Below, one piece after another: positions 11,801 to 63,157 of a stretch of DNA of 64,000 bases. The stretch's first letter is position 1; every line of letters starts with the position of its first letter. A model generated the notes under the pieces. The model ran no database searches. It saw nothing but the letters and a program-made list of their open reading frames with translations, and had not been told where the DNA came from. Location of the stretch: NCBI GenBank assembly GCA_965112735.1, contig OZ218958.1:1736001-1800000 (forward strand). Reading direction: 5' to 3'. Made by a program: the position numbers and the translations under genes. The stretch is from Phaeosaccion multiseriatum (lineage: Eukaryota; Protista; Ochrophyta, other classes).

Positions 11801-12364
11801 CTGGTGAAATCTGCCGTGCCTCCTCTCCCCTCCTCCTCCTCCTCCTCCTCCTCCTCCACCACCACCACCACCACCACCTCCTCCTCCTCCTCCTCCACCT
11901 CCTCCTCCTCCTCCTCCTCCGTTTCCTCGACGGCGGCGAGCGGTAGCAAGACTGGGCAACGGCAAGGGCAAGGACAAGACAGCTCGAAGCAAGCAGGAGC
12001 CGCAACGGGGGGGCTGCGATTGTACACAGAGAAGGTAGGAGAGTTGTAGTCCGTCGTATTCGTCGCCACCCTGTGATGATGTCGCCACTCTCACACTCTC
12101 TCTCTCTCTCTCTCTCTCTCTTCTTCTCTCACGCCCTTCCTCCCTCCCTCCGGCCTGCCTTCTCACCCTCCTCCCTCACACTTGTGCCCCCAAAGCCCCG
12201 CTCTGCTTTGCTGTGCTTGTGCTTCGCTTACGTTGCGTCTCCTCGACGTTCCTCCCTACCTCCTAACCCCCCCCCCCTCCCCTCCACACACACACACAGG
12301 TGAAGGAAGGGACGGTCTTTCGCGTGGCGACACAGTCCGCTATGCTCCGGCGCACCTCCTCCTC

Positions 12365-12397
<33 letters not shown>

Positions 12398-13655
12398 GGC
12401 CTCCTCGGAGACAGAGATGTGCTACACAGAGGTGTTTGGGAAGGATCTCTTTAAGAAAGAGACAAATATGCAGCCTTTCGTGGGTATGATTGTCGACACA
12501 GGGGGTAGAGTTGCCAAGAGCGGAGGAGGAGGAGGAGGAGGAGGAGGAGGATGTGGTGGTGGTAGTGGTGGCGATGGATATCAGGAGCTTGGCAAGATTG
12601 AAGGCGCCTTTGGGCAGGGAGGAAAGTTCAAAGTCGTCTTCCCGGGGGGTGCGGCGGTGGGGGTGGGGAGCAAGCTGTACCTGCGCTTTCGGAGATACGC
12701 ACACGACAAGAGTAAGTCCATGCGGCAGGACTGGCTGCAAGAGAGCTATCAACGAGTCGCCAAGCAGGGGGCACACAGGTTGTTAAAGCCTAAGCTTCCT
12801 CCTCCCGTGCCCTCGACGAACGACCACAACAAGAACAGCAATAGCATGAAAGGGGGATCAAAGTCTCCTCCTCCTCCTACTACTGCTGCTACTGCTGCTG
12901 GTGGTGGTGTGGCTGGTGGTGCTGCTGCTGCTGCTTTGCCTCCCTCTGAACAAGGGCCGATTTGCAGAGGGCAGGGGCTGGGTGGTGCAGCGTCAGAAGG
13001 AGGTCGCAAGAAGAAGGAGAGGTCGGAGAAGGGAGGTTCGACTGCCCACACCGTATCACCAACTGCTGCTGCTGCTGCTGCCACCCCCGACACTGCTCTT
13101 CGCCTTGAAGGACCGGTCGCGACAGCAGTTGGTGATACACCGACGCCAGCGCCAGCAGCGCTTACAGTTGGTGGTACCACAGCCCCAACAGTTGTCGGTG
13201 GTGAAGCATCTCCACGGACGGGGGTCATCGACGCCCTCAAAGGCGAAGTGATCCCCTCAGGCTCAGAGACGGACGACCATAAGGAGGGCCACACAGGGGG
13301 AGACAACGGGGTACGGGCGCGGGTACGGCACACCATGTGCGTGGCCAAGGGGCTGTTCGGGATGGAGGAGGACATTCGAGCCTTTGCAGGGAGGCCCGTC
13401 GTTGTGCTTGTGAGCAAGGGGGGAGGGGGACAGGGGGTAAGCGAGGGTGACGGAGGAGGCAAGGAGGAGGAGGAGGAGGAGGAGGAGAAGGAGCAGCAGT
13501 GCGAAGGGCAGTACGAGGAGGAGGAAGGACGAGTGATGGGACCGTTCGGCAAGGCGGGCAAGTGTAAGCTGAGCTTCGAGAGAGGCACCACCTGTCAGGT
13601 GGGGGACAGAGTCTTCTTACGACCCCTGCCTACAGCACCCCCACCGCCGCCGTAG
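8831..13655 (+). CDS. EEFSEC: Selenocysteine-specific translation elongation factor (eEFSec/SelB), 6 exons
   Basis: NINVGVLGHVDSGKTSL, ALDKNPQSRERGITLDLGFS, TLVDCPGHASLIRTIIGGAQIID, NKID, DHCFSIKGQGTVITGT, KVKSMQMF, LFKKETN, GAFGQGGKFK, FRRY. Exons 8831-9028, 9297-9839, 10186-10562, 10851-11019, 11132-12034, 12300-13655. Confidence 0.95.
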
Positions 13656-27206: not shown

Positions 27207-27370
27207 TCACCAGAAGGCACACCAGCCCAGGAAGAGCTGCCACAAGTTGGTCGTGTCCAGCATTACCAAAAGGCACACCAGCCCAGGAAGAGCTGGCACA
27301 AGTTGGTCGTGTCCAGCATTACCAAAAGGCACACCAGCCCAGGAAGAGCTGGCACAAGTTGGTGGTGTCT
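27207..27370 (-). repeat. 56-bp tandem triplication of the TOR 3' end (FATC-coding) sequence
   Basis: Units start at 27207, 27263 and 27319 on the + strand. The third unit is the true TOR terminus. Confidence 0.95.
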
Positions 27371-27804
27371 GTGGCCGCTTCAATCAGGCGGTCCACCTGC
27401 TGCTCCACACTCAAGCCGCTGCGGATCACGCTGCCGCTGCTACTGGTGCTCCTAACCTGCTGATGACCCACGCTTCCTCCTCCTCCTCCTCCTCCTCCTC
27501 CTCCACCACCACCACCACCACCACCACCACTGCTGCCATCGCCGGAGCGCTGATGCGAGCGGTGGTCTCGGGTGCGGCTGCTGCTCCTCTGAGGCGCAGG
27601 CGCAGGACAAGTCGTTGCTGCTGGTGGGGCCACTGCTGCTGTCGCTACCCCACCCTCTGCCCCACTGGAACTCACATCTCCAAATTCTGTCCCAGAAAGC
27701 TTCTCGAATATGCGAGAAATCACTCGCAAAGCCTGCTCGTTGACACTTTCTTCCTTTCTGAGCTGCTGCCTGCCTCCCGCTCTCTTGGCCCCACCCTCGC
27801 CACG

Positions 27805-27853
<49 letters not shown>

Positions 27854-28488
27854 CTTGGTGATACAGCTTCACTTTCATGCTGCTCCTCCGTCCCATGCTG
27901 AGGCCCTTTCGAAGCTCGAGCAGTACGAAGGACAGCAGCAGCGGCAGCACGACCATCCATTACCTTCTTCCCACCACCACCACCACCCCCTGCGGCGCCC
28001 ACACCACGGCCTACGCGGCGTACGTCTCCCGGAGAGAGGGGCTTAAAGGCAGGAGGAGTGTTGCCTCCTCCCTTTCCTTCGTTGCCGTCGTTGCCTCCGT
28101 CGTCGTCGCCAACAACTGGCTTTTTCTGTAACAGTCGCCATCCAATGAGAGGGTCGTGTACAAAGGCTTCCAGCATGGCCATGAGGGAGTCTTTGTTGGA
28201 GCTGAGTAGACCCATTGTGTGCTTGCAAGTGGCACGGAACGTCCCGTCGATACCGCTCACCTCCATTGCTTCCACAAGCATACGGGTCAGGCGGAAGGGT
28301 ACCTTCTCGGGGTATTTGTCGCTGTAAGGGGGGGGGGGGGGGGGGGGGTGAGGGGGGGAATGAAGGGGGGGGGGGGGGGGGTATGGAGAGAGGACAGGAA
28401 GAGAGAGACAGAGAAAGAGAGAGGAGGGAGGGGATATGGAGAGAGAGGGACACAACACACGGAGACGGGGCAAGAGGAAGCAAGACAA

Positions 28489-28523
<35 letters not shown>

Positions 28524-29452
28524 ACCGCAGCGTTGCCACTTCGAAGCAGTCGCCAAAGTCGATGTGCACAACACGACCTGACGCTCGATCGATCATGATG
28601 TTGCTCGGGTGTCTGCACAGAGGTACGTAAGCAGGTAGGTAGGTAGGTAGGTGGTAGAAAAGTAGGCAGGTAAGTAGGTGGTGGGTAGGTAGGTAGGTAG
28701 GTAGGTAGGTAGGTGGGTAGGTAGATGGGTAGGTAGGTAGGTAGGTAGGCAGGGAGGTGGGTGGGTGGGCAGGTAGATAGGTAGGTGGGTAGGTAGGTAG
28801 GAGGCAGGGAGCACATAGAGAGGAGAGGGCAGGGCAGGGCGAATGTGCCCTTGACGCTTAGGAAAGGCCACGAATTGCTCTCACATCCACCTCATGCCAC
28901 CTGTTGCGCAGACTTCCCTTGCCGCGAGTGGTTGCGAGCGAGAGATGGGGCGGGCCCCCAACGCTTCAAATGCTTCTCCCCTTCCGTACTTCCGTCGCAC
29001 GCACCTGCTCCCTCCCTCTCCCTCTCTCCCCCCTATCTCTATCCTTCTCGCTCTTCCTCCGTTTCTCTCTCGTTCTCCCCCCCCCCCTCTGTCTATTCGT
29101 CTCTCTCTCTCTCTCTCTCTTCCCTCTCACTCCCTCTACCCGCTCCCTCTACCCTCTCCCTCTCTCCATCATTCCCTGCCTCCCTCCCTCCCTCCCTCCC
29201 TCCCTCCCTCCCCCTTCCCTTCTCCTGCATCTCTCGCACCTGTCTCCCAGCCCCAGCACGTATCCCGCCATGCTCATGACCGCAAGAGAGCGTGTGTACG
29301 TGTTCCGGCGGTCCAGCCATGACTCGGAAGAGCTATACCGTATACAGTGCAGTGACGCATATCGTGCAGTGCCGTGACGAGTGATGTGTGTGAGTGGGAT
29401 GAAAGGAGAGGAGATGGCGAGGAGACGAGAGGAGGAGGGACAGCCATCAGCG

Positions 29453-29499
<47 letters not shown>

Positions 29500-32400
29500 G
29501 GGGAGACGCACACGCACATGAGGCACACACACATCCCTCACCTACTCTTGAGCCACAAAATTCTAGCGAGGTCCCTCCCATCGGAGGCCTCCAAACAGTG
29601 CTCGAAGGCCTCTGCCTTGTTGAGCACAGGGAGCTTGTCGAAGTCAGGGGCGAAGGAGAGGAGGCGGCCGTGTTCTGCGTTGAGGGGGTCGCCTCTCTCC
29701 TCTCGGTGCTGCTTGATGAGCTCGTGGAGCGTATCGCATCTGACGGAGGGAGAGGGGAGGGGAGGGGAGGAGGAGAAGGAGGAGGAGGAGGTGGTGGTGG
29801 TGGTGGTGGAGGAGGTGGTGGTGGTGGTGGTGGTGGAGGAGGAGGAGGAGGAGGAGGAGGAGGAGGAGGAGAAGGAGGAGGACGAGGAGTAGAAGGAGCA
29901 AGAGAAGGAGAAGGAGGAGGAGGCGGCGGGTCAAGAAAGAGTGCGTAAGTATGTAGGAAGTATGTAAAACGTGTGCAAGACAAGTGTGTATGTGTGCAGC
30001 ACCATGTACCTCGGGGCCCATCCCATCCCATGTGCCCCTCTGAAACATGACTCCCCCCCCAATAACGCTCCCTCCCTCCTTCCCTCCCTCGCTCCCTCCC
30101 TCCCTCCCTCCCTCCCTCCGTCCCTCCGTCCCTCCCCCCCCCCTCTCTCCCTCTCCCCCTCTCTCCCTCCCCCCCCTCTCTCCCTCCCTCCCTCCCCTCC
30201 CTCCTTCCCTTTCTCCCTCCCTCCCTTTCTCCCTCCCCTCCCCCACCTTACCTCGGAACCCAACCGATGATCCCCGAGGTGGCCGAGAGGGGCATGACGG
30301 CGTATCTCTGAATGTCGAGGTGATGCAAAGTTCGCTCTCCCTCCACAAGCCGCTCACTGGCGAGCAGGGCGTTGATGAGACCGAACAGCTGCATGACTCG
30401 CTCGTCTTGTCTGTGAGGATGTGTGGGCAGGGAGGGGGGGAGGGGGGGGGGGGTGGGGAGTGGGTGAGTGAGTGAGTGAGTGAGTGAGTGAGGGGGACGG
30501 AGAGAGAGAGATGCCGCAACTGAGAGAGGGAGGGAGGGAGGGAGGGAAGATAAGAGAGAGATAGAGAGATATGTAGACAGAGACAGGTACCAACAGGACA
30601 GACAAAAGACAAGCAACACAGACTAACAGTCTGTCTGACTAGTTTACCGACGCACCGAAGATCTTCGCTACCCTTTACGAGGAACTTATATGCCTTTCCG
30701 TCGCTGCCGAGCATGGTGAGCTTTCTTGGCCGCTGCTTGCTCCATGTCACCAGCGTTACCACCGGAGAGAAGCCCATGATCCGAACAATGTCCTCCTCCC
30801 CACCACCTCCTCCACCCATGCCTGCTCCTCCCTCTCCTCCACCTCCACCTCCTCCTCCTCCTCCTCCTCCTCTTCCTCCCCCTCCCCCCCGTCCTCCTCC
30901 TCCTCCTCCACCACCACCAATCCCACCTCTAGCACCCGCACCCGCCCCCACCCCCGCGCCGCCACCATATGCTGCGTCCACTTCCGCAAAGGGAGAGGAG
31001 GCAAACGACGACGACGTATACCCAACTCCTCCAGCCCCTACTCCTGCACCCACTCCACCCAGTCCTCCAGCCATCGGCTGAGCCCCGCTGAGGGCGTCCG
31101 TGCCCGGCACTGCAAGTCTCAAGCCACGGGCATGCAGCAGTGCAGGGGATAGGTGCGCGAGGTCGAGGAAGCGCAAACTGGCCAGCTTGGCTGACAGCGA
31201 GAAGAAGATGGTGTAGTGCGCATCCCACGCCTCGTGGAGATCAAGCTCCAGACGGGAGTTTCTGAAACGGTCGAGCCATTTTCTCGCTTCGAACAGGTCT
31301 CTGCCGTAAGAGTGGATAAATCCGACGGTGCTCAGCCCACCCCCAAAAGCGCGTTCCTCACCTCCCTCCCCGCCCGACCCCACCCTGCCGTCCGTGTTGA
31401 CGCTGACCTCCTCCTCAAGCTTGACATGTAGTGCTTCGAGCGTCGCCAGCATGCCGTCAACGTCGTTTTCTTCAAAGTAGAGACGAGCCGCCTCTATAAT
31501 GCCGCTGTGCCAGCGCTCGGCCATGGTCATTGCAACCTTGTTGAGCTCCTGTTTGGGTTGGTTGATTGAGTAACAGGAGTGAGAAGAGGAGAGGAGGGAA
31601 GGAAGGAGAGGAGGAGAGAAATGGGAGGGGAGGGGAGGGGAGGGGAGGGGAGAGGAGGGGAGGGGCGAGGATGATGTCAATCAAACTGAAACCCAAACCG
31701 AACCCACGTAACACCTCACGTAATCAGAGCATCCTTACCTGGCTGACGAGAAGGGCCTCATCCACGAGCTGCGGCTGGTGCGTCCTCAAGTCAGCAACGA
31801 CGGCACTGGCGGCCGCCCTCCGCTGCCATCGATGGCTCTCGTCTCTCCTGCTGGCGACGACGATGGGGTACACGAGCGCGTGAGGATGCTTGCGCCCCAC
31901 GCGGCAGAGCAGCGACAGCAACAGCAGCGGGTCCCCACGGCGGCTTTGCTCCTCTTCCTCCTCCTCCTCCTCCTCCTCCTCCTCCTCATACTGCTCTTCC
32001 TGCTCCTCGGCGTGATCATACGCCCCATTCTCAGGATCCCACTCGTCACCCACAGGTGGCGCCGACGAAGACCCAGCCCCAGTCGTTGGTGATACAGTAG
32101 CCGCTGAAGCAGGAGGAGAGCAAGAAGCAGAAGCATAACCAGAAGGAGAGGCCGAGGGAGACCCTGAGGCCGTGGGCGAGGAGGACGTGGACGAGACCCC
32201 TTCACCTTCCGCGTCCACCTCCACCTCCAGCCCTGTCCTCCGGCTATTCGAACTCGGGATACGGGCCAAGAGCTGAGGGAGCACCGGCAGCCATGTATCC
32301 AAGCTCACCCTCTGCACGCCGTCTTCCACCACACGCCGGACGTCTCCCACCTCACTGTTGGCGAACCAGAGACTCAACAGGCGCAGAGTGTCCGTGAGGA

Positions 32401-55015: not shown

Positions 55016-55893
55016 CGAAGAGCTGCGTAGTCACTCAGCTGGCGCGTGTCGATGTCGAGATCGATATCATCGACATTGGCAATATAGAGGTTATGTTGAT
55101 AGAGGTGAAGAAGAATGAAAACTGAAACTGCATAGCTGGCTCTGCTTGGTCACCCCTCCCCCTTCTTCTCGCGTCATCTCGATGTACGCACACAGAAGCT
55201 CTGAGGCGAACGAATACTAACACTATTGGGTTTGGTGTTTGCTGATCCGATTCACAGATCCCGATCCCAGGAGGGGGGACGGAAGTTCCATTTCGTGGGT
55301 GAGAGGGCAGCGGCAAGCTTGAAGCCTGTGTTGAGCGCAGACAGACGCGACGGCGCAGCTTCTGCCTAGATGAGAGGTGCCTGCCTTTGGTCTCCACACG
55401 AGCACAACCCCCGCCTAGGACCTGGCGTTCACCTTCGCTATTGTGTGATTACACTGTAGCAGGGCAAAACCCTTCTCTAAGATACGACTGCTTGCTGTGC
55501 CCGCATGCCCCACCCTGGAAGCCCTCGGCCTCTGTCCATCGGGATTACACTCTCCCCCTTCAAACGAGCTCACCCTCACTCTCACCCCCCCCCTCAAGCT
55601 ATACACTTCATCCATTGGTCCCGTAAGCTACACACGTGACTCCCCTCCCCCCCCGGACCCGCTACCTCCTGTACTCCTTTCGACAGAGCATCGCAATCAC
55701 TTCACCGCTCTTACACCAAGCCAGTGTGCCGTGGGCTGCCGAGTCTCTCTCTCGCATCGCATCCTGATGTACAGGCTCACTCGCATGGGCTGCATGACTG
55801 GTGCAAGTGAGCAGCTGGAGCGGTACTCTTTCGTTGCCAAAGTCGTCGTTGCCCTAGCTACCAGCCCCCACCTCACACATCTCTCCTGCTCGC

Positions 55894-57393
55894 TCAGCCC
55901 ATCTCCTCCGCCATGCTCTCCCACGTCTCGCTCCCCACACTCCAGGGCCTCTCCAGCGGCAGGATTCCGCTCTCCTTGCCGAAGGTCGGATCCGTCCTTC
56001 GCATGAGGTCCAGCGCGGTTTGGGACCGGAAGAAGGCTGCTGCCGCCTCCATAAGTCGCTGCTCGATGCCGAGGCCGGGCTGACACCGCCGTGCCCCAGC
56101 CAAGGCCTTGTCCACCGAAGCATCGGCCGAGAGGAGCTGCCGCGCAGTCCCGTGGTGGTCTGTGAAGATGGCAGCAAAGAGAGGAGTCATACCGTTTGAT
56201 GACGTGATATCGATGGGGGATCCCGCAGAGATGAGACGAGCGACGGCGGCCTCGTGCCCATGGTGCGCGGCGAGGTAGAGGGCTGAATTGCCCTTGTTGG
56301 TCCTTTTGTCTACACGTGCTCCCGCAGAGAGAAGCTTCTCCACCACGGCGTCGCGCCCTGCCTGACAGGCATGGTGAAGAGGAGTGACACCGTGGACGTC
56401 AGCCTTGTCGATGCTGGCGTGGGCCCTCATGAGCTGCTGTACGATGCCCGCATGCCCATTGAACGATGCCTGATGAAGCGGAGTTCTCCCTTGATTATCT
56501 GCGTGGTTCACATCCGCTTGGGCTGAGATGAGGTGCCTTACAACATAGCCATGTCCGTTCTGAGAGGCATACCAAATCGAAGACAAGCCCTGCTTGTCCG
56601 CCACGTCGACGTTAGCGCGCGCCGAAAGCAGCTGCTGCACTGTCGTGGAGTGCCCCATGTCTGATGCCATAATCAAGGGAGTAACTCCTGTGCCACTCGC
56701 TTGGTCGACAGGGGCTCCCATGTCCAACAGCCGCCTCACCACCTGATCGTGTCCGTTGCCGCTAGCGGCTATCAATGGCGTGTTTCTATCGGGTCCCCCT
56801 CTGGTGCTGAAGGAGGCCCCTTCCCGCAGCAGCAGGTCCATGACATCCAGCCGACCGTCTCCTGCAGCCGCAAGCATAGCGGTATGTTCGTGTTCGTCGA
56901 TAGGCTGATCCAAACTCGCTTTACCATGTTTGGCGATGAGCTTGGTAACCAGTGCTCTCACATTGGGGAAGCTCTCCCATCTGTCCAGGGCCTGCCCCAG
57001 CCGCCGCGCCTGGTGTTGTTGAGGGAAACGAGGATGGGGGGGAGAGACGCATATACATAGGCTATAAGGGATCAGCAGGAAGCTGCTCACTGCTTCGATA
57101 CGTGAGCATCCCACTGCAGCCATCGTATCCACAAACCCCTCCCTCGCTCTGCTCTCTTCGAAACACAAGAGTCCATTTGTTTTCTCAAAGGCGGGGGGAG
57201 AGGCGCATAGGCTACACCGGATTAAAAGGGATCAACGGAGAGCTGCCTGTTGCGTCGACACGTGAGCATCCCACCGCAGCTAATCGTATCCGCAGAAGGA
57301 CCCCTCTCCTTGCTCTACGCTTTCCAAAGAACACCTGTCTCACAGGAGGGCGCTAGGTCGTACCTCGGGCGTTAAAGTTGCCTGCTGCGCCAT
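55894..57393 (-). CDS. Ankyrin-repeat protein, copy A (~8 repeats), 2 exons
   Basis: Repeats of the G.TPL..A...GH...V..LL..GA.VD type. Exon 1 is 57393-57364 (MAQQATLTPE, donor GTACGA). Exon 2 is 57009-55894. Confidence 0.88.
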
Positions 57394-57530
57394 GGTGAGC
57401 AAGCGACCCCTCCCTTGAGACGGTAGTGCTGACAAGGGGGCTACAGAAGGCCCTCTCCCTGCTGCGCCTGCTGTGCAGTAGTCGGTCGCTCTGCCTTTCT
57501 TATCAGGCCTCCCCGCTGATACAATTAGTT

Positions 57531-60500
57531 ATGGAGGCCTCTGAAGGCATTGGGTTTGGTGATCCGATTCACAGATCCCGATCCCAGGGGGGGGGAGTTC
57601 CTTGCGAGAGCAAGCAGAGCAGAGCAGGGAGGGTCATGGGAGGAGAAGGTAAAGGGCAAGCAGGAGCAGGAGCCGCTGTATGGACTCCTCTCCCTCCCGC
57701 GAGACCAGCGGAGCCCTTCACCTTCTCCCCCCTTCTCCTGCAGGGCCTGGGCATCAGCACTCCCTCCCCCGGTACGGCTCTGCCCTTCCAGCCCCCCTGG
57801 ACCGATTCCGAGGGCCTGGCCCCGTGGAGCACCACGAATGCGGAGTGGTGGCGAGTGCGTGAGGGGTTCGTGAGCGAGCCAAGCTGTAAGCTCCCTGCTT
57901 TCGGCTAGATACAGCCTCACCTCCTCTTTAGGAGAGCTTCACTCGCCCACTCGCTTCCCCTCCCCCGCCCACCCCACCTCCCATACCCCATATCCCACAA
58001 CCCCACAGCCGCTCAAACTCGTTCATTCTCCGGGCAGACAGGAGCTCCGCGTCGTCAGCGGGAGAAGGAAAGGGAGAAGGAGAGGGGTTGGGTAGCCGCA
58101 TGCCGTCGCGAGGAGAGCATGTAGACGAACTCGAAACCGAACTCGATGCCGATGCCGATGTCAATGTCGATGTCGAAGGCGCGCCCCTGGAGGAAGCAGG
58201 GGTGATGGGTGCCTCCTCCTCTTTCTCCTCGTCCTCCCACGCGGCCTTGTTGCAGCGCATGGGTCTCGTGATACCCAAGTTTGGCCGTGTGCAGCAGTAT
58301 GAAGACCTGCAGCGGGAGCTGGAGATGGTCAGGGGGGAGGAGGAGAAGGACTACGCAGGAGGAGGGAGGAGACTAGAGGGCAGGGCTCTAGGCGGGGACA
58401 GACGACTCGGCCTGCCAGCGCTCGGCCTCGGATGGAGGGGGGCGCCGGGCAGACCCAGGGGGGGCAGGGTGAGCAGGCACGAAGGAAGCAAGTGGCTGTG
58501 GATGAAAGTTGAGGGCTGAAGGCTGAATGACAGCATGACAGCAGCTGTCAAGGCCGAGTGGGGATGGAGGGGGGTCGGTACCAGGATGTTGGGGGTGTTA
58601 GAAGTCGAGCTTTTGCTAGACTGATACCCACACTCTGAATTCAGACCGGGAGGTAAGCACAGGCGCAAGGCGCCAAGGTGGATAATGAACAATTGAGTCC
58701 TTTTCGTCCTTCTTTCTCTCTGCCCCTCTCTCTGTCGCTCTCGCTCACTCGTATCTCTCTCTCTCGCTTTCTCTCCCTCCTTCTCCCTCTCTCTCCCCTC
58801 TCTCTCGCTCTCGTCACCTGCCTCTCTCTCCCACCTTTCCTCCCTCCCTCTCTCTCTCTCTCCTTTCCCCCCCCCCCCTCCCTCCGTCCGTGGGCCACAG
58901 ACGCGTACACCGCTCTGTTTCGACAGCAGGCCAGGCAGCGCTTGCAGCGCCCGCGCCATGAAGAGGCGGAACGAACAGATGCAGCAGCGCATAGGGGGCA
59001 AGGGCGGCAGAGAGGGAGGGCTGCTGATGCGGGGGGCGGCAGCGGTTCAGCAGCAACAGCGGCAATCGGGCCAAGCCTCTGCTCTGCGGTGAGGGAGGGG
59101 AGGGAGGGAGAGAGCGAGTTGGTGATACAGAGGGAGGGAGTGAGCGAGTGGGAGTAAATGGGTGCGGGAGGAAGTGAGGGAGCGAGAGCGGGGGGGCGAA
59201 GGAAGGAAGAAGGATAGCAGCGTCGCCAGCACGGCAGTGAGGTCTCGCAACAGAGAAGACAGCGACGTGTGTATTAAATGAGCAATTGATGCCCTCGCAC
59301 CCCGTACCTGGTCCTGTGTGTGCTCTGCTGCTCTGCTGCTCTGCCGCACCATTCATGTCTGCTCGATCCTGCTCTACGCGGCTCTATCCCACTCCTTTCT
59401 GCTCCCCATCTCTCATCGCAAAGGCCAAGCTTCGGAGTCGTCGGGAGAAGCAGCAGCAGCGGCGAGCAGCCGCCATCGCGGCGAAGACGTTGTGGGATCC
59501 AGCACGGCCAGAGGAGGAGCAAGGCCGGTGACGGCTGTTGCCGCTGTACCACCAACTGTTGTATCTCGAGACGATGTGCTGGAGTGGGGTAAGCAGATCG
59601 AAATGGCACTGTACAGGAGGGCAGAGCTCGTCGAAGGCGGCAAGATGTTCGCCGTCAATGGAGGGTGAGGGGAGAGGAGGGGGGAAGGGGTGAGGGAGGG
59701 AAGGAGGGAGGGAGGGAGGGAGGGAGGGAGGGGGTGAGGGATATCGCAGAGAGGATAGAGTATGCGATGGATCCAACGCTCGAGGGGATGTACCGACGAA
59801 ACGATGGGGTGACTCCCCGCAGCACGATGGTGCGCTCTGCTCTACCCCTCTTGACATATGCTTCCTCCCTCCCTCCTTCCATCCTTCCTTCCTTCCTTCC
59901 TTCCTTCCTTCCTTCCTTCCTTCCTTCCTTCCTTCCTTCCTTCCTTCCTTCCTTCATTCCTTCCTTCAAATCATTGACTTAGCGTTCACTCTGACGACCT
60001 CCTCCCCCCCTCTCTCCTCTTCTCCACCCTCTCCACCTCCCCCTCCTCTCTGCCCACGCTTCCTCCCTTTTCTCCGCTGCTGCCAGGGAACAAGTACGCT
60101 CATCGAAGAAGATCCTTCCGCCGCCGCCGCCGGAGTGTCTTCCTTGCACAGAGACCGTTCCAGATCTGTACAACCGCTTCGACGCGCACCCTTGGACTCC
60201 GCGCGGAGCGGTCTGCGATCGTTCCGGGCCTCACGATCCCCCGGGGCGGAGAGGAGGGGGCGGGAGGAGGATACGTTGGGTGGAGGGCCAGGGGGAGGGG
60301 GGAGCATGAGCCATCGGAGAGTTCCCAATCTCGCCATTGGGGGGGGGGGGGAGAAGCTCTGTCTCTGTTTCTGTCTATGGCTCCAACACTCAGGAGGAGG
60401 GGGAGTGGGGCGTCACAAATGGCTTCAGTATCACCAACACCAGGACGGGGAGAGGGGGTGGGAGGGGAGGACGCGGCATTGGACTTGGGTATCAGCAGAG

Positions 60501-60680
60501 GCCCATTGGAAGCCCCGTCACAGGGACGGGCAGGAGAGAGAAGGAGGAGGTATCAGAGGTGGTAGTGGTGGTGGTGACCGGGTTGGTGCTGGGCCGGCGT
60601 CAGCCCCTGTGAGTCGGGTGGGAGGGGTGAAGGCGGGGGTAGCGGGGGAGAGGAGGGAGGGACGCCGCGAGGGAGGGTAG
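57531..60680 (+). CDS. Hypothetical low-complexity protein (multi-exon, structure uncertain)
   Basis: ATG at 57531 is head-to-head with ankyrin A. Coding-like blocks lie at ~57531-57885, ~58020-58650, ~58900-59088, ~59424-59664 (DDVLEWGKQIEMALYRRAEL) and ~60088-60680, separated by GT-AG introns with the usual microsatellite polarity. Confidence 0.4.
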
Positions 60681-61671
60681 CAGGAGGAGGGGCAAGAGGA
60701 GGAGTAAGGGAGGAAGAGGATGAGGAGGAGGCGGGTAGGGCGGGTAGACGAGGAATCCATCCTCACTCAATCACTCACTCACGTTTTCACTTTCTAGCTC
60801 TATTCTATAAACGAAGTCCAGAGAGCAAATGCAATACACATGCTTCTCCAAGGTCGAGAGGCAAGCAGCAAGATCCACAGATGGATACAATTGCGGCACT
60901 CCGTACCCACTGCCTCCCCGCTACTCTCTTCCGTCCGCTAGGAAACATGGCTCACCCGTACGCTTCTTTCTGATCCCCACTTGATGTTGCCGAGGGCAGG
61001 GCTCTCTTCACACGAGGGGGCACAAATAGAGACCAAAAAGAGCCGGGGGGCATTGGGGAAGTCACTGAGTACCAGCTTATCTTGTTTACGTAATCTTTCG
61101 TAATAGCAAAGTGTTTCATCAGTCACTGAGTACGCATAGACTCGATTGGGGGGAGCTTGCCTTTTGTCTCCACTCGAGCACAACCCCCGCCTAGGACCTG
61201 GCGTTCACCTTCGCCATTGTGTGATTAGCAGGGCAGTACCCTTCTCTAAGATACGACTACTTGCTGTGCCCGCATGCCCCACCCTGGAAGCCCTCGGCCT
61301 CTATCCATCGGGATTACACTCTCCCCCTTCAAACGAGCTGACCCTCCCTCTCACCCCCCCCCTCAAGCTGTACACTTCATCCATTGGTCCCGTAAGCTAC
61401 GATACACACGTGACTCCCCTCCCCCCCCGGACCCCCTACCTCCTGTACTCCGCTCCTCTCTGCGACAGGGCATCGCAATCACTTCACCGCTCTTCCACCA
61501 AGCCAGTGTGCCGCGGGCAGTCTCTCTCTCGCATCGCATCCTGATGTACAGGCTCACTCGCATGGGCTACATGGCTGGTGCAAGTGAACAAGCTGGAGCG
61601 GTACTGTTTCGTTGCCAAAGTCGTCGTTGCCCTAGCTACCAGCCCCCACCTCGCACATCCCTCCTGCTCCC

Positions 61672-63157
61672 TCAGCTCATCTCCTCCGCCATGCTCTCCC
61701 ACGTTTCGCTCCCCACACTCCAGGGCCTCTCCAGCGGCAGGATTCCGCTCTCCTTGCCGAAGGTCGGATCCGTCCTTCGCATGAGGTCCAGCGCGGTTTG
61801 GGACCGGAAGAAGGCTGCTGCCGCCTCCATAAGTCGCTGCTCAATCTCGGCCTCGTCATCATGCAGCCGTGCCCCAGCCAAGGCCTTGCCCACTGAAGCA
61901 CCGGCCGAGAGGAGCTGCCGCGCAGTCCCGTGGTGGTCTCTGAAGATGGCAGCAAGGAGGGGAGTCATACCGTTCGATGCCGTGGTATCAATGGGGGCTC
62001 CCGCAGAGATGAGACGAGCGACGACGGCCTCGTGCCCATGGTGCGCTGCAATGTGGAGGGGTGAAGCGCCCTTGTTGGTCCTTTTGTCCACACGTGCTCC
62101 CGCAGAGAGAAGCTTCTCCACCACGGCGTCGTGCCCTTCCTGACAGGCAATGTGAAGAGGAGTGACACCGTGGACGTCAGCCTTGTCGATGATGGCGTGG
62201 GCCCTGATGAGCTGCTGTACGATGCCCGCATGCCCTTTGGCCGATGCCGCCAGAAGCGGAGTTCCCCCTACATCATTTGCGTGGTTCACATCCGCTTGGG
62301 CTGAGATGAGGTGCCCTACAACAGAGCCATATCCGTTCTGAGAGGCAATCCAAATCGGAGAAAAGCCACGTTCCGCCACCAAGTCGACACTAGCACGCGC
62401 CGTGAGCAGCTGCTGCACTGTCGTGGAGTGCCCCGTTCCTGATGCTGCAATCAAGGGAGTAACTCCTGTGTCATTCGCTTGGTCGACAGGGGCTCCCATG
62501 TCCAACAGCCGCCTCACCACCTGATCGTGTCCGTTGCCGCTAGCGACTATCAACGGCGTGCGTTGAAAGGGTCCATCTCGGGCGCTGAAGGAGGCCCCTT
62601 CCCGCAGCAGCAGGTCCATGACATCCAGCCGACCGTCTTGTGCAGCCACAAGCATAGCGGTATTTCCTTCTTCGTTGATAGGCTGATCCAAACTCGCTTT
62701 ACCATGTTTGGCGATGAGCTTTCCAATCAGCGCTTTCACAGTGGGGAAGCTGTCTCCTCTGTCCAGGGCCTGCCCCAGCTGCCGCGCCTGGTGTTGTTGA
62801 GCGAAACGAGAATGGGGGGGAGAGACGCATAAACATAGGCAATAAGGGATCAACAGGAAGCGGCTCACTGCTTCGATACGTGAGCATCCCACCGCAGCCA
62901 TCGTATCCACAAAAACCACCCTCGCTTTTATTCACATCAGCCTCGTACTGTGCTTCAAACGCGGTGAAGAGACACGTACAGGGATCAGCAGAAAGCTGGT
63001 CACTGCATCGGAAGCGTTATGGGAGCTTCCTACTGCATCTGTCGTGTCTACCATCCTCCCCTGCCCCCTTGCGCTTCTCCTCTCTGAAGCACAGTGAGTC
63101 TTCCTGCAAGAGGGCGCTAGGTCGTACCTCGGGCGTTAACGTTGCCTGCTGCGCCAT
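61672..63157 (-). CDS. Ankyrin-repeat protein, copy B (~8 repeats), 2 exons
   Basis: Paralogue of copy A. Exon 1 is 63157-63128 (MAQQATLTPE) and exon 2 is 62787-61672. The C-terminal ~57 aa are nearly identical to copy A. Confidence 0.88.

What the first reader, a model, noticed from the sequence alone, without database searches (positions are those of the whole stretch)
55894..63157. Ankyrin paralogues differ mostly at binding-surface positions, resembling a natural DARPin-like variable receptor family
Seen, A vs B repeat by repeat: DEHEHTAMLAAAGDG/NEEGNTAMLVAAQDG, GGPDRNTPLIA/DGPFQRTPLIV, SGTGVTPLIMASDMG/NDTGVTPLIAASGTG, ADKQGLSSIWY/VAERGFSPIWI, DNQGRTPLHQASFNG/NDVGGTPLLAASAKG, HHACQAGR/HIACQEGH, NSALYL/ASPLHI, LFAAIFTD/LLAAIFRD. 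Second helices, the C-terminal ~57 aa, exon 1 and much of the non-coding 3' flank are nearly unchanged. Established: the beta-turn and first-helix exposed residues form the concave binding face and are the positions randomised in DARPins. Inference: diversifying selection on ligand recognition over a constant scaffold and tail, as expected of an innate-immunity or antiviral sensor/effector family.
Basis: partly seen in the sequence, partly recalled or inferred. Interest (0 to 1): 0.75.

Follow-up and report, generated by a model that had tools for sequence, protein, structure and literature searches.

The report
Fast-evolving ankyrin binding-protein gene array
Two neighbouring genes in a microbial eukaryote (probably a stramenopile alga) belong to a family of 150 or more ankyrin-repeat proteins whose predicted gripping groove is driven to change by natural selection while the scaffold and a unique C-terminal tail stay constant, the signature of a recognition repertoire whose targets, partner and expression are still unknown.

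Summary
Genes A (55894-57393, minus strand) and B (61672-63157, minus strand) are intact two-exon paralogues, 82% identical. Each has an N-cap, 8 ankyrin repeats, a 12-aa variable linker and a 57-aa constant tail.

A/B differences hit 20 of 49 DARPin-randomised positions against 35 of 216 other repeat positions (p=3e-4). The tail differs at 1 of 57 residues.

They are two units of a ~6 kb tandem array. The family has at least 150 tail-bearing copies in this 67 Mb genome, and exon 2 is open in 29 of 29 close copies.

Codon likelihood over 27 copies:
- Groove positions 1, 2, 3, 5, 9, 10, 13, 14: omega 2-5.
- Scaffold: omega 0.6.
- Tail: omega 0.2-0.5.

A tree-free test on 12 independent pairs, with the local synonymous rate left free, still gives omega 1.7 at the DARPin positions fixed in advance (LRT 11.6).

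Paralogues are mosaics: trees from the two gene halves reject each other. The tail is also about 4-fold less diverse at silent sites.

No relative of the tail turned up in Pfam, in a 1.8-billion-protein profile search, or in viral and metagenome scans.

Diversifying selection on the binding face is supported. The immune or antiviral role is untested. Other windows of this scan reported the same kind of family elsewhere in this genome.

The parts
55894..57009 (-). Gene A, exon 2 (371 codons plus stop): N-cap, 8 ankyrin repeats, linker, tail
   Evidence: Open frame. Pfam Ank, Ank_2 and related families at E 1e-45. The conserved CAG acceptor lies just upstream.
57010..57363 (-). Gene A intron (354 nt, GT..AG), containing an internal ~130-nt duplication
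   Evidence: GTACGA donor and CAG acceptor. In 20 of 29 paralogues this stretch has stops in the exon-2 frame. Internal repeat 57037-57163 versus 57193-57328.
57364..57393 (-). Gene A exon 1 (ATG plus 9 codons, phase 0)
   Evidence: ATG...GAG|GTA is conserved in 28 of 29 close copies, 340-388 nt upstream of exon 2.
56104..56898 (-). Gene A ankyrin-repeat region (exon-2 residues 38-302, 8 repeats) carrying the hypervariable groove positions
   Evidence: Register derived. Site-wise omega.
56068..56103 (-). Gene A variable linker (12 residues)
   Evidence: 7 of 12 residues differ from B. Family omega 1.5-3.
55897..56067 (-). Gene A constant tail (57 residues)
   Evidence: 1 of 57 residues differs from B. 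Nucleotide diversity 0.014-0.019 across 27 copies. No homologue found anywhere searched.
55376..55893 (-). Gene A conserved 3' flank (probable 3' UTR)
   Evidence: 95.1% identical to B's flank. Family diversity is 0.06-0.10 out to about +420 nt and reaches the unalignable level beyond about +540 nt.
61672..62787 (-). Gene B, exon 2 (371 codons plus stop)
62788..63127 (-). Gene B intron (340 nt, GT..AG)
63128..63157 (-). Gene B exon 1 (ATG plus 9 codons)
61882..62676 (-). Gene B ankyrin-repeat region (8 repeats)
   Evidence: AlphaFold2 model with mean pLDDT 90.4. Foldseek top hits are DARPins and ankyrin-R/B.
61675..61881 (-). Gene B linker (61846-61881) and constant tail (61675-61845)
   Evidence: In the model, helices at 299-306, 312-329 and 332-339 cap the solenoid. 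Residues 340-359 are disordered (pLDDT below 50) and are followed by a low-confidence terminal helix.
61152..61671 (-). Gene B conserved 3' flank
57609..61151 (.). Low-complexity spacer of the tandem unit, itself repeated in the next units of the array
   Evidence: 89-95% identical to spacers at window-equivalent 64182-66516 and 70900-73115. Its six longest ORFs have no Pfam match.

Best explanation
A and B are two intact members of a lineage-specific, massively expanded family of small intracellular ankyrin-repeat binding proteins. Each has a 10-residue exon 1, an N-cap, 8 repeats, a variable linker and a constant 57-residue tail. The family sits in tandem arrays on several chromosomes. Positive diversifying selection keeps changing the residues that line the concave groove: the beta-turn tips and the exposed face of the first helix, repeat positions 1, 2, 3, 5, 9, 10, 13 and 14. 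The second helices and the hydrophobic core stay constrained. Exchange between paralogues (gene conversion or unequal recombination, including between chromosomes) reshuffles the variable segments. The tail and the 5' and 3' ends are kept nearly identical. Inferred, not shown: each paralogue binds a different ligand through its groove, and the invariant tail couples all of them to one shared partner or output. The tail consists of two capping helices followed by a conserved but disordered peptide. This makes the family a germline-encoded recognition repertoire, most plausibly engaged in a conflict with viruses, parasites or selfish elements.
For: Gene integrity:
- Exon 2 is open in 29 of 29 close copies (369-392 codons), while the stretch just upstream has stops in 20 of 29.
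- The exon 1 ATG and GT donor are conserved in 28 of 29 copies.

Family size and layout:
- At least 150 tail matches in the genome.
- The array has a ~6 kb period and continues beyond the window.

Fold:
- Pfam Ank families at E 1e-45.
- AlphaFold2 model with pLDDT 90.4.
- Top Foldseek hits are DARPins and ankyrins.

Selection, family-wide:
- M0 omega is 1.08.
- Allowing omega>1 classes improves 2dlnL by 913.
- 55 repeat sites have P(omega>1)>0.9. Of these, 46 fall at positions 1, 2, 3, 5, 9, 10, 13, 14 and 29 in the pre-chosen DARPin set (odds ratio 10.6, p=2e-11).
- With a partition-specific synonymous rate, omega is 2.0 (LRT 25) at the DARPin set, 2.5 (LRT 66) at the extended set and 0.6 at the scaffold.
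- Scaffold codons next to the variable ones have a normal synonymous rate (x0.85), which argues against a local mutation hot region.

Selection, tree-free over 12 independent pairs:
- Omega is 1.7 (1.4-2.0) at the DARPin set and 2 (1.7-3) at the extended set.
- For A versus B alone, omega is 3.5 or 5 at the two sets, 0.8 at the scaffold and 0.1 at the tail.
- Variable columns hold a mean of 4.9 different residues against 1.7 in the scaffold.

Shuffling:
- Trees from the 5' and 3' halves reject each other (AU p=7e-28 and 9e-5).
- The nearest paralogue switches along A and B, including to copies on other contigs.

Constant tail:
- Nucleotide diversity is 0.017, against 0.09-0.17 in the repeats.
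- Omega is 0.2-0.5.
- The tail is conserved down to 44-60% identity in distant subfamilies with 8 to about 28 repeats.
Against: - There is no transcript, protein or ligand evidence.
- The splice model rests on conservation only.
- Recombination among paralogues inflates tree-based site tests, so the omega of 4-6 is an upper bound.
- With Nei-Gojobori counting, dS at the variable codons is itself raised (0.15-0.18 against 0.063), and the local dN/dS is then only 1.1-1.4. The ML analyses that allow for this still reject omega=1, but by a modest margin for the pre-chosen set (LRT 11.6).
- The scaffold omega of 0.6 shows rather relaxed constraint overall.
- The tail's low silent-site diversity (0.026 against 0.096, p=0.005) means part of its constancy could be homogenisation rather than function.
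- No signalling or effector domain is attached, so the immune reading has no direct support.
Confidence: 0.7

Rival explanations
1. Neutral drift. Surface residues of a redundant, recently amplified ankyrin family are simply unconstrained (omega about 1) while the core is constrained. The periodic pattern is then structural tolerance, not selection for change.
For: Nei-Gojobori dN/dS computed against the local dS of the variable codons is only 1.1-1.4. The scaffold omega is 0.6 and the N-cap omega about 0.8-1.0, so constraint is generally weak. Recombination is known to produce false positives in site models, and it is strong here.
Against: Omega=1 is rejected at the pre-chosen positions even when the synonymous rate is free (LRT 25 on the tree) and in the tree-free analysis (LRT 11.6 over 12 independent pairs; LRT 30.6 for the extended set). 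dN at the variable codons exceeds gene-wide dS in 12 of 13 pairs, by 2-5 fold. For A versus B it also exceeds the divergence of the 3' flank (0.29 against 0.05).
Confidence: 0.12
2. Mutational rather than selective origin. The variable codons are targets of a local hypermutation or templated diversification process, so both silent and replacement changes pile up there.
For: The synonymous rate fitted to the variable codons is 1.7-2.0 times the gene average, and dS is raised there in most pairs.
Against: Scaffold codons interleaved with the variable ones (positions 4, 6, 7, 8, 11, 12, 15) have the same synonymous rate as distant scaffold codons (x0.85 both), so no tract is affected. Replacement changes still exceed silent ones about 2-fold at the variable codons. 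Multi-base changes within a selected codon are expected to inflate apparent silent change. No reverse transcriptase or template repeat was seen in the unit (for the spacer ORFs).
Confidence: 0.05
3. A housekeeping adaptor family. The proteins are substrate or cargo adaptors for endogenous cell processes (for example receptor subunits of a ubiquitin ligase or a trafficking complex bound through the tail). Their diversification reflects sub-functionalisation, not conflict with pathogens.
For: The architecture, a variable ankyrin module plus a short constant C-terminal docking module, is that of ASB (ankyrin-SOCS box) and poxviral ANK-PRANC adaptors (my knowledge). The tail's disordered but conserved peptide looks like a docking motif.
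Against: Sustained omega above 1, at least 150 copies, tandem arrays and inter-paralogue shuffling are typical of conflict-driven repertoires rather than of housekeeping adaptors. No SOCS-box, F-box, PRANC or BTB match was found in the tail.
Confidence: 0.15
4. A decaying or silent amplified array. The copies are unexpressed relics of a recent segmental amplification.
For: The next copy beyond the window (L029, C9:1804374-1805147) is frameshifted, and some family fragments exist. There are no expression data.
Against: Exon 2 is intact over 1.1 kb in 29 of 29 close copies at 73-83% identity, while the adjacent intron accumulates stops. The scaffold and tail are under purifying selection (omega 0.6 and 0.2-0.5, both rejecting 1). 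Splice sites and the start codon are conserved.
Confidence: 0.05

Closest known systems
Ankyrin-repeat domains of fungal NOD-like receptors (Podospora and others; Dyrka et al. 2014, PMC4986451)
   Same: The ankyrin repeats show positive diversifying selection at a handful of positions that map to the concave face (inner helices and beta-hairpin). Diversity is generated by recombination within and between loci. Both are intracellular and are proposed to act in non-self recognition.
   Different: The fungal proteins carry a NACHT or NB-ARC domain and an N-terminal effector domain. Their diversity lies among near-identical repeats within one gene, with repeat-number polymorphism. Here there is no NOD or effector domain, each of the 8 repeats has its own identity, and diversity lies between at least 150 paralogous genes that share an orphan C-terminal tail.
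DARPins (designed ankyrin repeat proteins; Binz et al. 2003, my knowledge; PMC8683736 for the principle)
   Same: Consensus-like ankyrin scaffold with N- and C-caps and a paratope made of a few surface positions per repeat. 29 of the 55 selected repeat sites fall on the six randomised positions. DARPins are the top structural matches.
   Different: DARPins are synthetic libraries with 2-3 internal repeats. Here there are 8 natural repeats, position 33 is not variable, positions 1, 9 and 10 are variable as well, and a constant non-ankyrin tail is present.
Brown-algal candidate immune receptors (LRR-ROCO and NB-ARC-TPR of Ectocarpus; Zambounis et al. 2012, PMC3341825)
   Same: A stramenopile lineage. 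Repeat-protein families with fast-evolving, shuffled repeat modules, proposed as a variable recognition system.
   Different: Those use LRR or TPR repeats encoded by one exon per repeat and shuffled as exons, joined to GTPase or NB-ARC domains. Here all ankyrin repeats lie in a single exon, with no signalling domain, and variation comes from point substitution plus gene conversion.
Ankyrin plus C-terminal adaptor-box proteins (animal ASB/SOCS-box, poxviral ANK-PRANC/F-box-like); my knowledge
   Same: A variable ankyrin recognition module followed by a short constant C-terminal module that docks to shared machinery. Large, fast-evolving families.
   Different: The tail here has no SOCS-box, F-box or PRANC match. 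It has no relative in a 1.84-billion-protein profile search, so a ubiquitin-ligase link is conjecture.

Membership tests
Ankyrin repeat superfamily (Pfam clan Ank) | Tandem 33-residue helix-turn-helix-loop repeats that match the Pfam Ank profiles above threshold | tested here: met
   PF00023 at 151-159 bits (cut-off 21.1) and PF12796 at 157-159 bits for A and B. The PDB sequence search gives ankyrin-1/2 at E 1e-95.
Ankyrin repeat superfamily (Pfam clan Ank) | Curved solenoid fold with a concave groove | tested here: met
   AlphaFold2 model with pLDDT 90.4 and paired helices in every repeat. Foldseek TM 0.72-0.77 to AnkB, ankyrin-1 and an extended DARPin.
DARPin-like variable paratope | Variation concentrated at repeat positions 2, 3, 5, 13, 14, 33 on a constant framework | tested here: met
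   Omega is 2.0-4 at these positions against 0.6-0.8 at the others. Selected sites are enriched 10.6-fold. Exceptions: position 33 is not variable, and positions 1, 9 and 10 are.
NOD-like / STAND receptors | A central NACHT or NB-ARC NTPase domain joined to the repeat domain | tested here: not met
   Only Ank families are found in A and B. The gene has a 10-codon exon 1 and a 371-codon exon 2. The spacer ORFs have no Pfam match.
ASB / ANK-PRANC / ANK-F-box adaptors | A C-terminal SOCS box, PRANC or F-box-like motif | tested here: not met
   No Pfam hit in the tail, either alone or within the whole protein. The profile search found no relatives.
ANK-BTB family reported by other notes for this genome | A C-terminal BTB-fold domain of about 100 residues; intronless gene | tested here: not met
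   The tail here is 57-69 residues, modelled as two or three helices plus a disordered peptide. There is no BTB Pfam hit. The gene has an intron.
Secreted or membrane receptor | An N-terminal signal peptide or a transmembrane segment | tested here: inconclusive
   Exon 1 encodes ten mostly polar residues, and no long hydrophobic stretch is visible in exon 2. No dedicated predictor was available.

The most novel reading that the evidence does not exclude
The family is a germline-encoded, combinatorially reshuffled intracellular recognition system of a stramenopile alga, built without any NOD, TIR or death-fold domain. At least 150 ankyrin 'paratopes' are diversified by selection and by inter-chromosomal gene conversion. 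That exchange is anchored on the near-invariant 5' end and on the tail plus 3' flank. All members are wired through one orphan C-terminal peptide to a single, still unknown effector. This would be an immune-like architecture not described in any lineage.
Probability: 0.25. Interest if true: 0.85.

Novelty: new variant of a known kind. Interest (0 to 1): 0.62.

Why it matters
Variable recognition families are known for LRR, WD40, TPR and ankyrin repeats, but almost always attached to signalling domains and mostly in animals, plants and fungi. This family would add three things:
- A large, well-delimited natural experiment in ankyrin paratope evolution: 8 repeats, about 65 selected sites and at least 150 genes.
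- A candidate defence or conflict system in a poorly studied algal lineage.
- An orphan 57-residue tail whose partner could reveal a new output pathway.

It also gives protein engineers a natural catalogue of tolerated and selected residues at DARPin positions, including positions 1, 9 and 10, which are not randomised in the classic libraries.

Tried and rejected
- Whole-protein word search: only generic ankyrin proteins at 28-43% identity, so nothing is learned about the family.
- Tail homologues: all blank. These were the word search restricted to residues 303-371, a profile of 22 tails against 1.84 billion representatives, Pfam on the tail, the ESM Atlas (scores up to 0.85, not informative), and IMG/VR and JGI metagenome scans. 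The single profile hit, P0121, is a translated tandem repeat and spurious.
- Transposon hypothesis for the 2.1 kb unit: only low-complexity inverted matches were found at its borders. Rejected for lack of evidence.
- Other genes in the spacer: its six longest ORFs have no Pfam match.
- Organism identification: the exact alpha-tubulin sequence is not in the collection. The best named relative is 98% identical, from a diatom transcriptome. This is compatible with a stramenopile but too conserved to be decisive.
- Nei-Gojobori local dN/dS: judged unreliable for multi-hit codons and replaced by ML with a free synonymous rate.
The mapping rests on the canonical repeat register.
- The spliced protein (exon 1 joined to exon 2) was never assembled or searched. 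All searches and the fold used exon 2 by reference.
Full report
**Context.** The window is contig 9, bases 1736001-1800000, of a 67 Mb assembly in 22 contigs. GC content is about 59%. The sequence is rich in microsatellite-like low complexity and has spliceosomal introns, so it is a eukaryote. An intronless alpha-tubulin from the same assembly is 98% identical to a sequence from a diatom transcriptome. That fits other notes of this scan that call the organism a stramenopile alga, but the marker is too conserved to be decisive. Nothing here looks human.

**Gene models.**
- Their first ~44 residues are not protein. In 20 of 29 close paralogues that stretch carries stops or frameshifts, while the following 369-392 codons are open in all 29.
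- A conserved CAG acceptor immediately precedes the residue that starts the conserved N-cap.
- A 30-nt exon 1 (ATG plus 9 codons, then GTA) lies 340-388 nt upstream in 28 of 29 copies.
- The models are therefore:
  - A: exon 1 57364-57393, intron 57010-57363, exon 2 55894-57009.
  - B: exon 1 63128-63157, intron 62788-63127, exon 2 61672-62787.
Every search, alignment and fold used exon 2 by reference.
- Exon 2 encodes, in order:

| Part | Residues |
|---|---|
| N-cap | 1-37 |
| Eight ankyrin repeats (the second has one extra residue in its turn) | 38-302 |
| Linker | 303-314 |
| Tail | 315-371 |

**Checking the observation.** All eight quoted string pairs are correct. A/B differences by region:

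| Region | Differences |
|---|---|
| Repeat positions 1-14 | 39 of 113 |
| Position 15 | 0 of 8 |
| Second helix (16-25) | 7 of 80 |
| Loop (26-33) | 9 of 64 |
| Linker | 7 of 12 |
| N-cap | 7 of 37 |
| Tail | 1 of 57 |

- I fixed the six DARPin-randomised positions (2, 3, 5, 13, 14, 33) in advance. At these, 20 of 49 differ against 35 of 216 elsewhere in the repeats (p=3.3e-4).
- Exon 1 differs by one synonymous base. The 3' flank is 95.1% identical.

**Surroundings.**
- A and B are units of a tandem array with a period of about 6 kb. The ~2.1 kb gene unit and the low-complexity spacer are both repeated.
- The array continues beyond the window with a frameshifted copy and a further intact one.
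- The spacer's six longest ORFs have no Pfam match.
- Searching the genome with B gives more than 200 matches, including an array of about 21 copies on contig 15 and others on contigs 2, 6, 1, 3, 5 and 13.
- The tail alone finds at least 150 places.
- Distant members (44-60% tail identity) share the same N-cap, the same apparent intron position and the same tail, but carry from 8 to about 28 repeats. Some have near-identical internal repeats.

**Selection, tree-based.** I built a codon alignment of 29 close copies and an ML tree of 28 of them, leaving out L030. I then fitted a GY94-type model with F3x4 frequencies in my own script, after also removing the long-branch copy L028, which leaves 27 sequences.
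- The one-ratio omega is 1.08.
- Allowing site classes with omega above 1 improves 2dlnL by 913.
- Pooled by repeat position, omega is 3-6 at positions 1, 3, 5, 9, 10, 13 and 14, and 1.75 at position 2. It is 0.05-0.9 at the remaining positions, except position 32 at about 1.25.
- 64 sites have posterior P(omega>1) above 0.9. Of these, 55 lie in the repeats; 46 of the 55 fall at the eight positions above, and 29 on the pre-chosen DARPin set (odds ratio 10.6, p=2e-11).
- Seven N-cap sites and two linker sites are also selected.

**Controls on the selection result.**
- *Local silent rate.* Nei-Gojobori counting shows that dS at the variable codons is itself raised (0.15-0.18 against 0.063). The local dN/dS is then only 1.1-1.4, although dN at variable codons exceeds gene-wide dS in 12 of 13 independent pairs.
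- *Free synonymous rate per partition.* I refitted with a separate synonymous rate for each partition:
  - DARPin set: rate x2.0, omega 2.0, LRT against omega=1 of 25.2.
  - Extended set: rate x1.7, omega 2.5 (2.0-3.0), LRT 65.9.
  - Scaffold: omega 0.6.
  - Scaffold codons interleaved with the variable ones have the same synonymous rate as distant ones (x0.85), so there is no hypermutated tract.
- *Recombination.* It is strong. Trees of the two gene halves reject each other (AU p=7e-28 and 9e-5). The nearest paralogue of A and of B changes along the gene, including to copies on contigs 15 and 2. Tree-based values are therefore upper bounds.
- *Tree-free test.* Pairwise ML over 12 independent sister pairs, with a free synonymous distance per pair and partition, gives:
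  - DARPin set: omega 1.7 (1.4-2.0; LRT 11.6).
  - Extended set: omega 2 (1.7-3; LRT 30.6).
  - Scaffold: omega 0.6.
  - Tail: omega 0.3.
  - Using each pair's scaffold synonymous distance instead, omega is 4-5.
  - For A versus B alone: 3.5 and 5 at the two sets, 0.8 at the scaffold and 0.1 at the tail.
- I conclude that positive diversifying selection on the groove positions is real. Its magnitude is about 2 on the conservative estimate.

**The tail.**
- Nucleotide diversity across 27 copies is 0.09-0.17 in the repeats, 0.06-0.10 in the first ~420 nt of 3' flank, and 0.014-0.019 in the last 156 coding bases. Similarity is lost beyond about -470 and +540 nt.
- Four-fold degenerate sites are about 4 times less diverse in the tail than in the scaffold (0.026 against 0.096, p=0.005).
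- The constancy therefore combines purifying selection on the protein (omega 0.2-0.5) with a DNA-level effect. That effect could be homogenisation by gene conversion, less hitch-hiking diversity than in the selected region, or nucleotide-level function.
- The AlphaFold2 model (pLDDT 90.4) shows a regular solenoid. Helices at 299-306, 312-329 and 332-339 cap it with good confidence. Residues 340-359 are disordered despite near-perfect conservation, and a low-confidence acidic helix ends the chain.
- A conserved disordered peptide is what a docking motif looks like. This is inference.
- No relative of the tail was found by any of the following:
  - Pfam.
  - A word search.
  - A 22-sequence profile against 1.84 billion proteins. 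Its one hit is a translated tandem repeat.
  - The ESM Atlas.
  - Viral and metagenome scans.

**Comparison with what is known.**
- The closest documented case is the ankyrin domain of fungal NOD-like receptors. There, five positions per repeat are under positive selection and map to the concave face, with recombination among repeats (PMC4986451).
- Brown-algal LRR-ROCO and NB-ARC-TPR families are the stramenopile precedent for shuffled repeat receptors (PMC3341825).
- This family differs in having no NTPase or effector domain, in placing diversity between many paralogous genes rather than within one, and in its orphan tail.
- I found no paper describing such a family in stramenopiles in the held library.
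- Other windows of this scan reported the same kind of ankyrin arrays elsewhere in this genome. At least some appear to be the same subfamily, so this is a repeat sighting within the scan.

**Verdict.** Diversifying selection on a constant scaffold and tail is supported. The immune or antiviral function is an open inference. I class it as a new variant of a known kind, with interest 0.62.

Noticed in passing
window 56068-56103 and 61846-61881: A 12-residue linker between the last repeat and the constant tail is itself hypervariable. 7 of 12 residues differ between A and B, family omega is 1.5-3, and one site has omega of about 10. B's version is shared with the broken next copy of the array (L029).
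   Followed up: partly
window 55897-56067 and 61675-61845: Silent (four-fold degenerate) sites of the tail are about 4 times less diverse than those of the ankyrin scaffold. 120 nt of the tail are identical between copies on different contigs. This points to DNA-level homogenisation or a nucleotide-level function on top of protein constraint.
   Followed up: partly
window 57037-57163 versus 57193-57328: The intron of gene A contains an internal tandem duplication of about 130 nt (77% identity) that includes a copy of the acceptor-proximal sequence. Elsewhere the introns of A and B are rearranged (71% identity overall).
   Followed up: no
L029 (G000:C9:1802874-1806647), just beyond the window end: The third copy of the array is broken. 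The frame is lost upstream of repeat 3, while repeats 3-8 and the tail remain open.
   Followed up: partly
L043 (G000:C9:2561400-2564900) and L032, L033, L044: Distant members of the same tail-bearing superfamily carry 12 to about 28 repeats, with runs of nearly identical internal repeats. This resembles the 'highly conserved repeats' of fungal NLRs.
   Followed up: no
window 27319-31680 (-): TOR kinase exons (FRB-like region, kinase C-terminal part and FATC) are interrupted by long low-complexity insertions. The window is generally full of (CT/GA)-rich and triplet microsatellites that translate as SLPP, EGRK, poly-Q, poly-E and poly-S runs.
   Followed up: no
window 12300-13655 (+): This ORF matches the C-terminal RIFT domain of the selenocysteine-specific elongation factor (PF21131, E 3e-12).
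   Followed up: no
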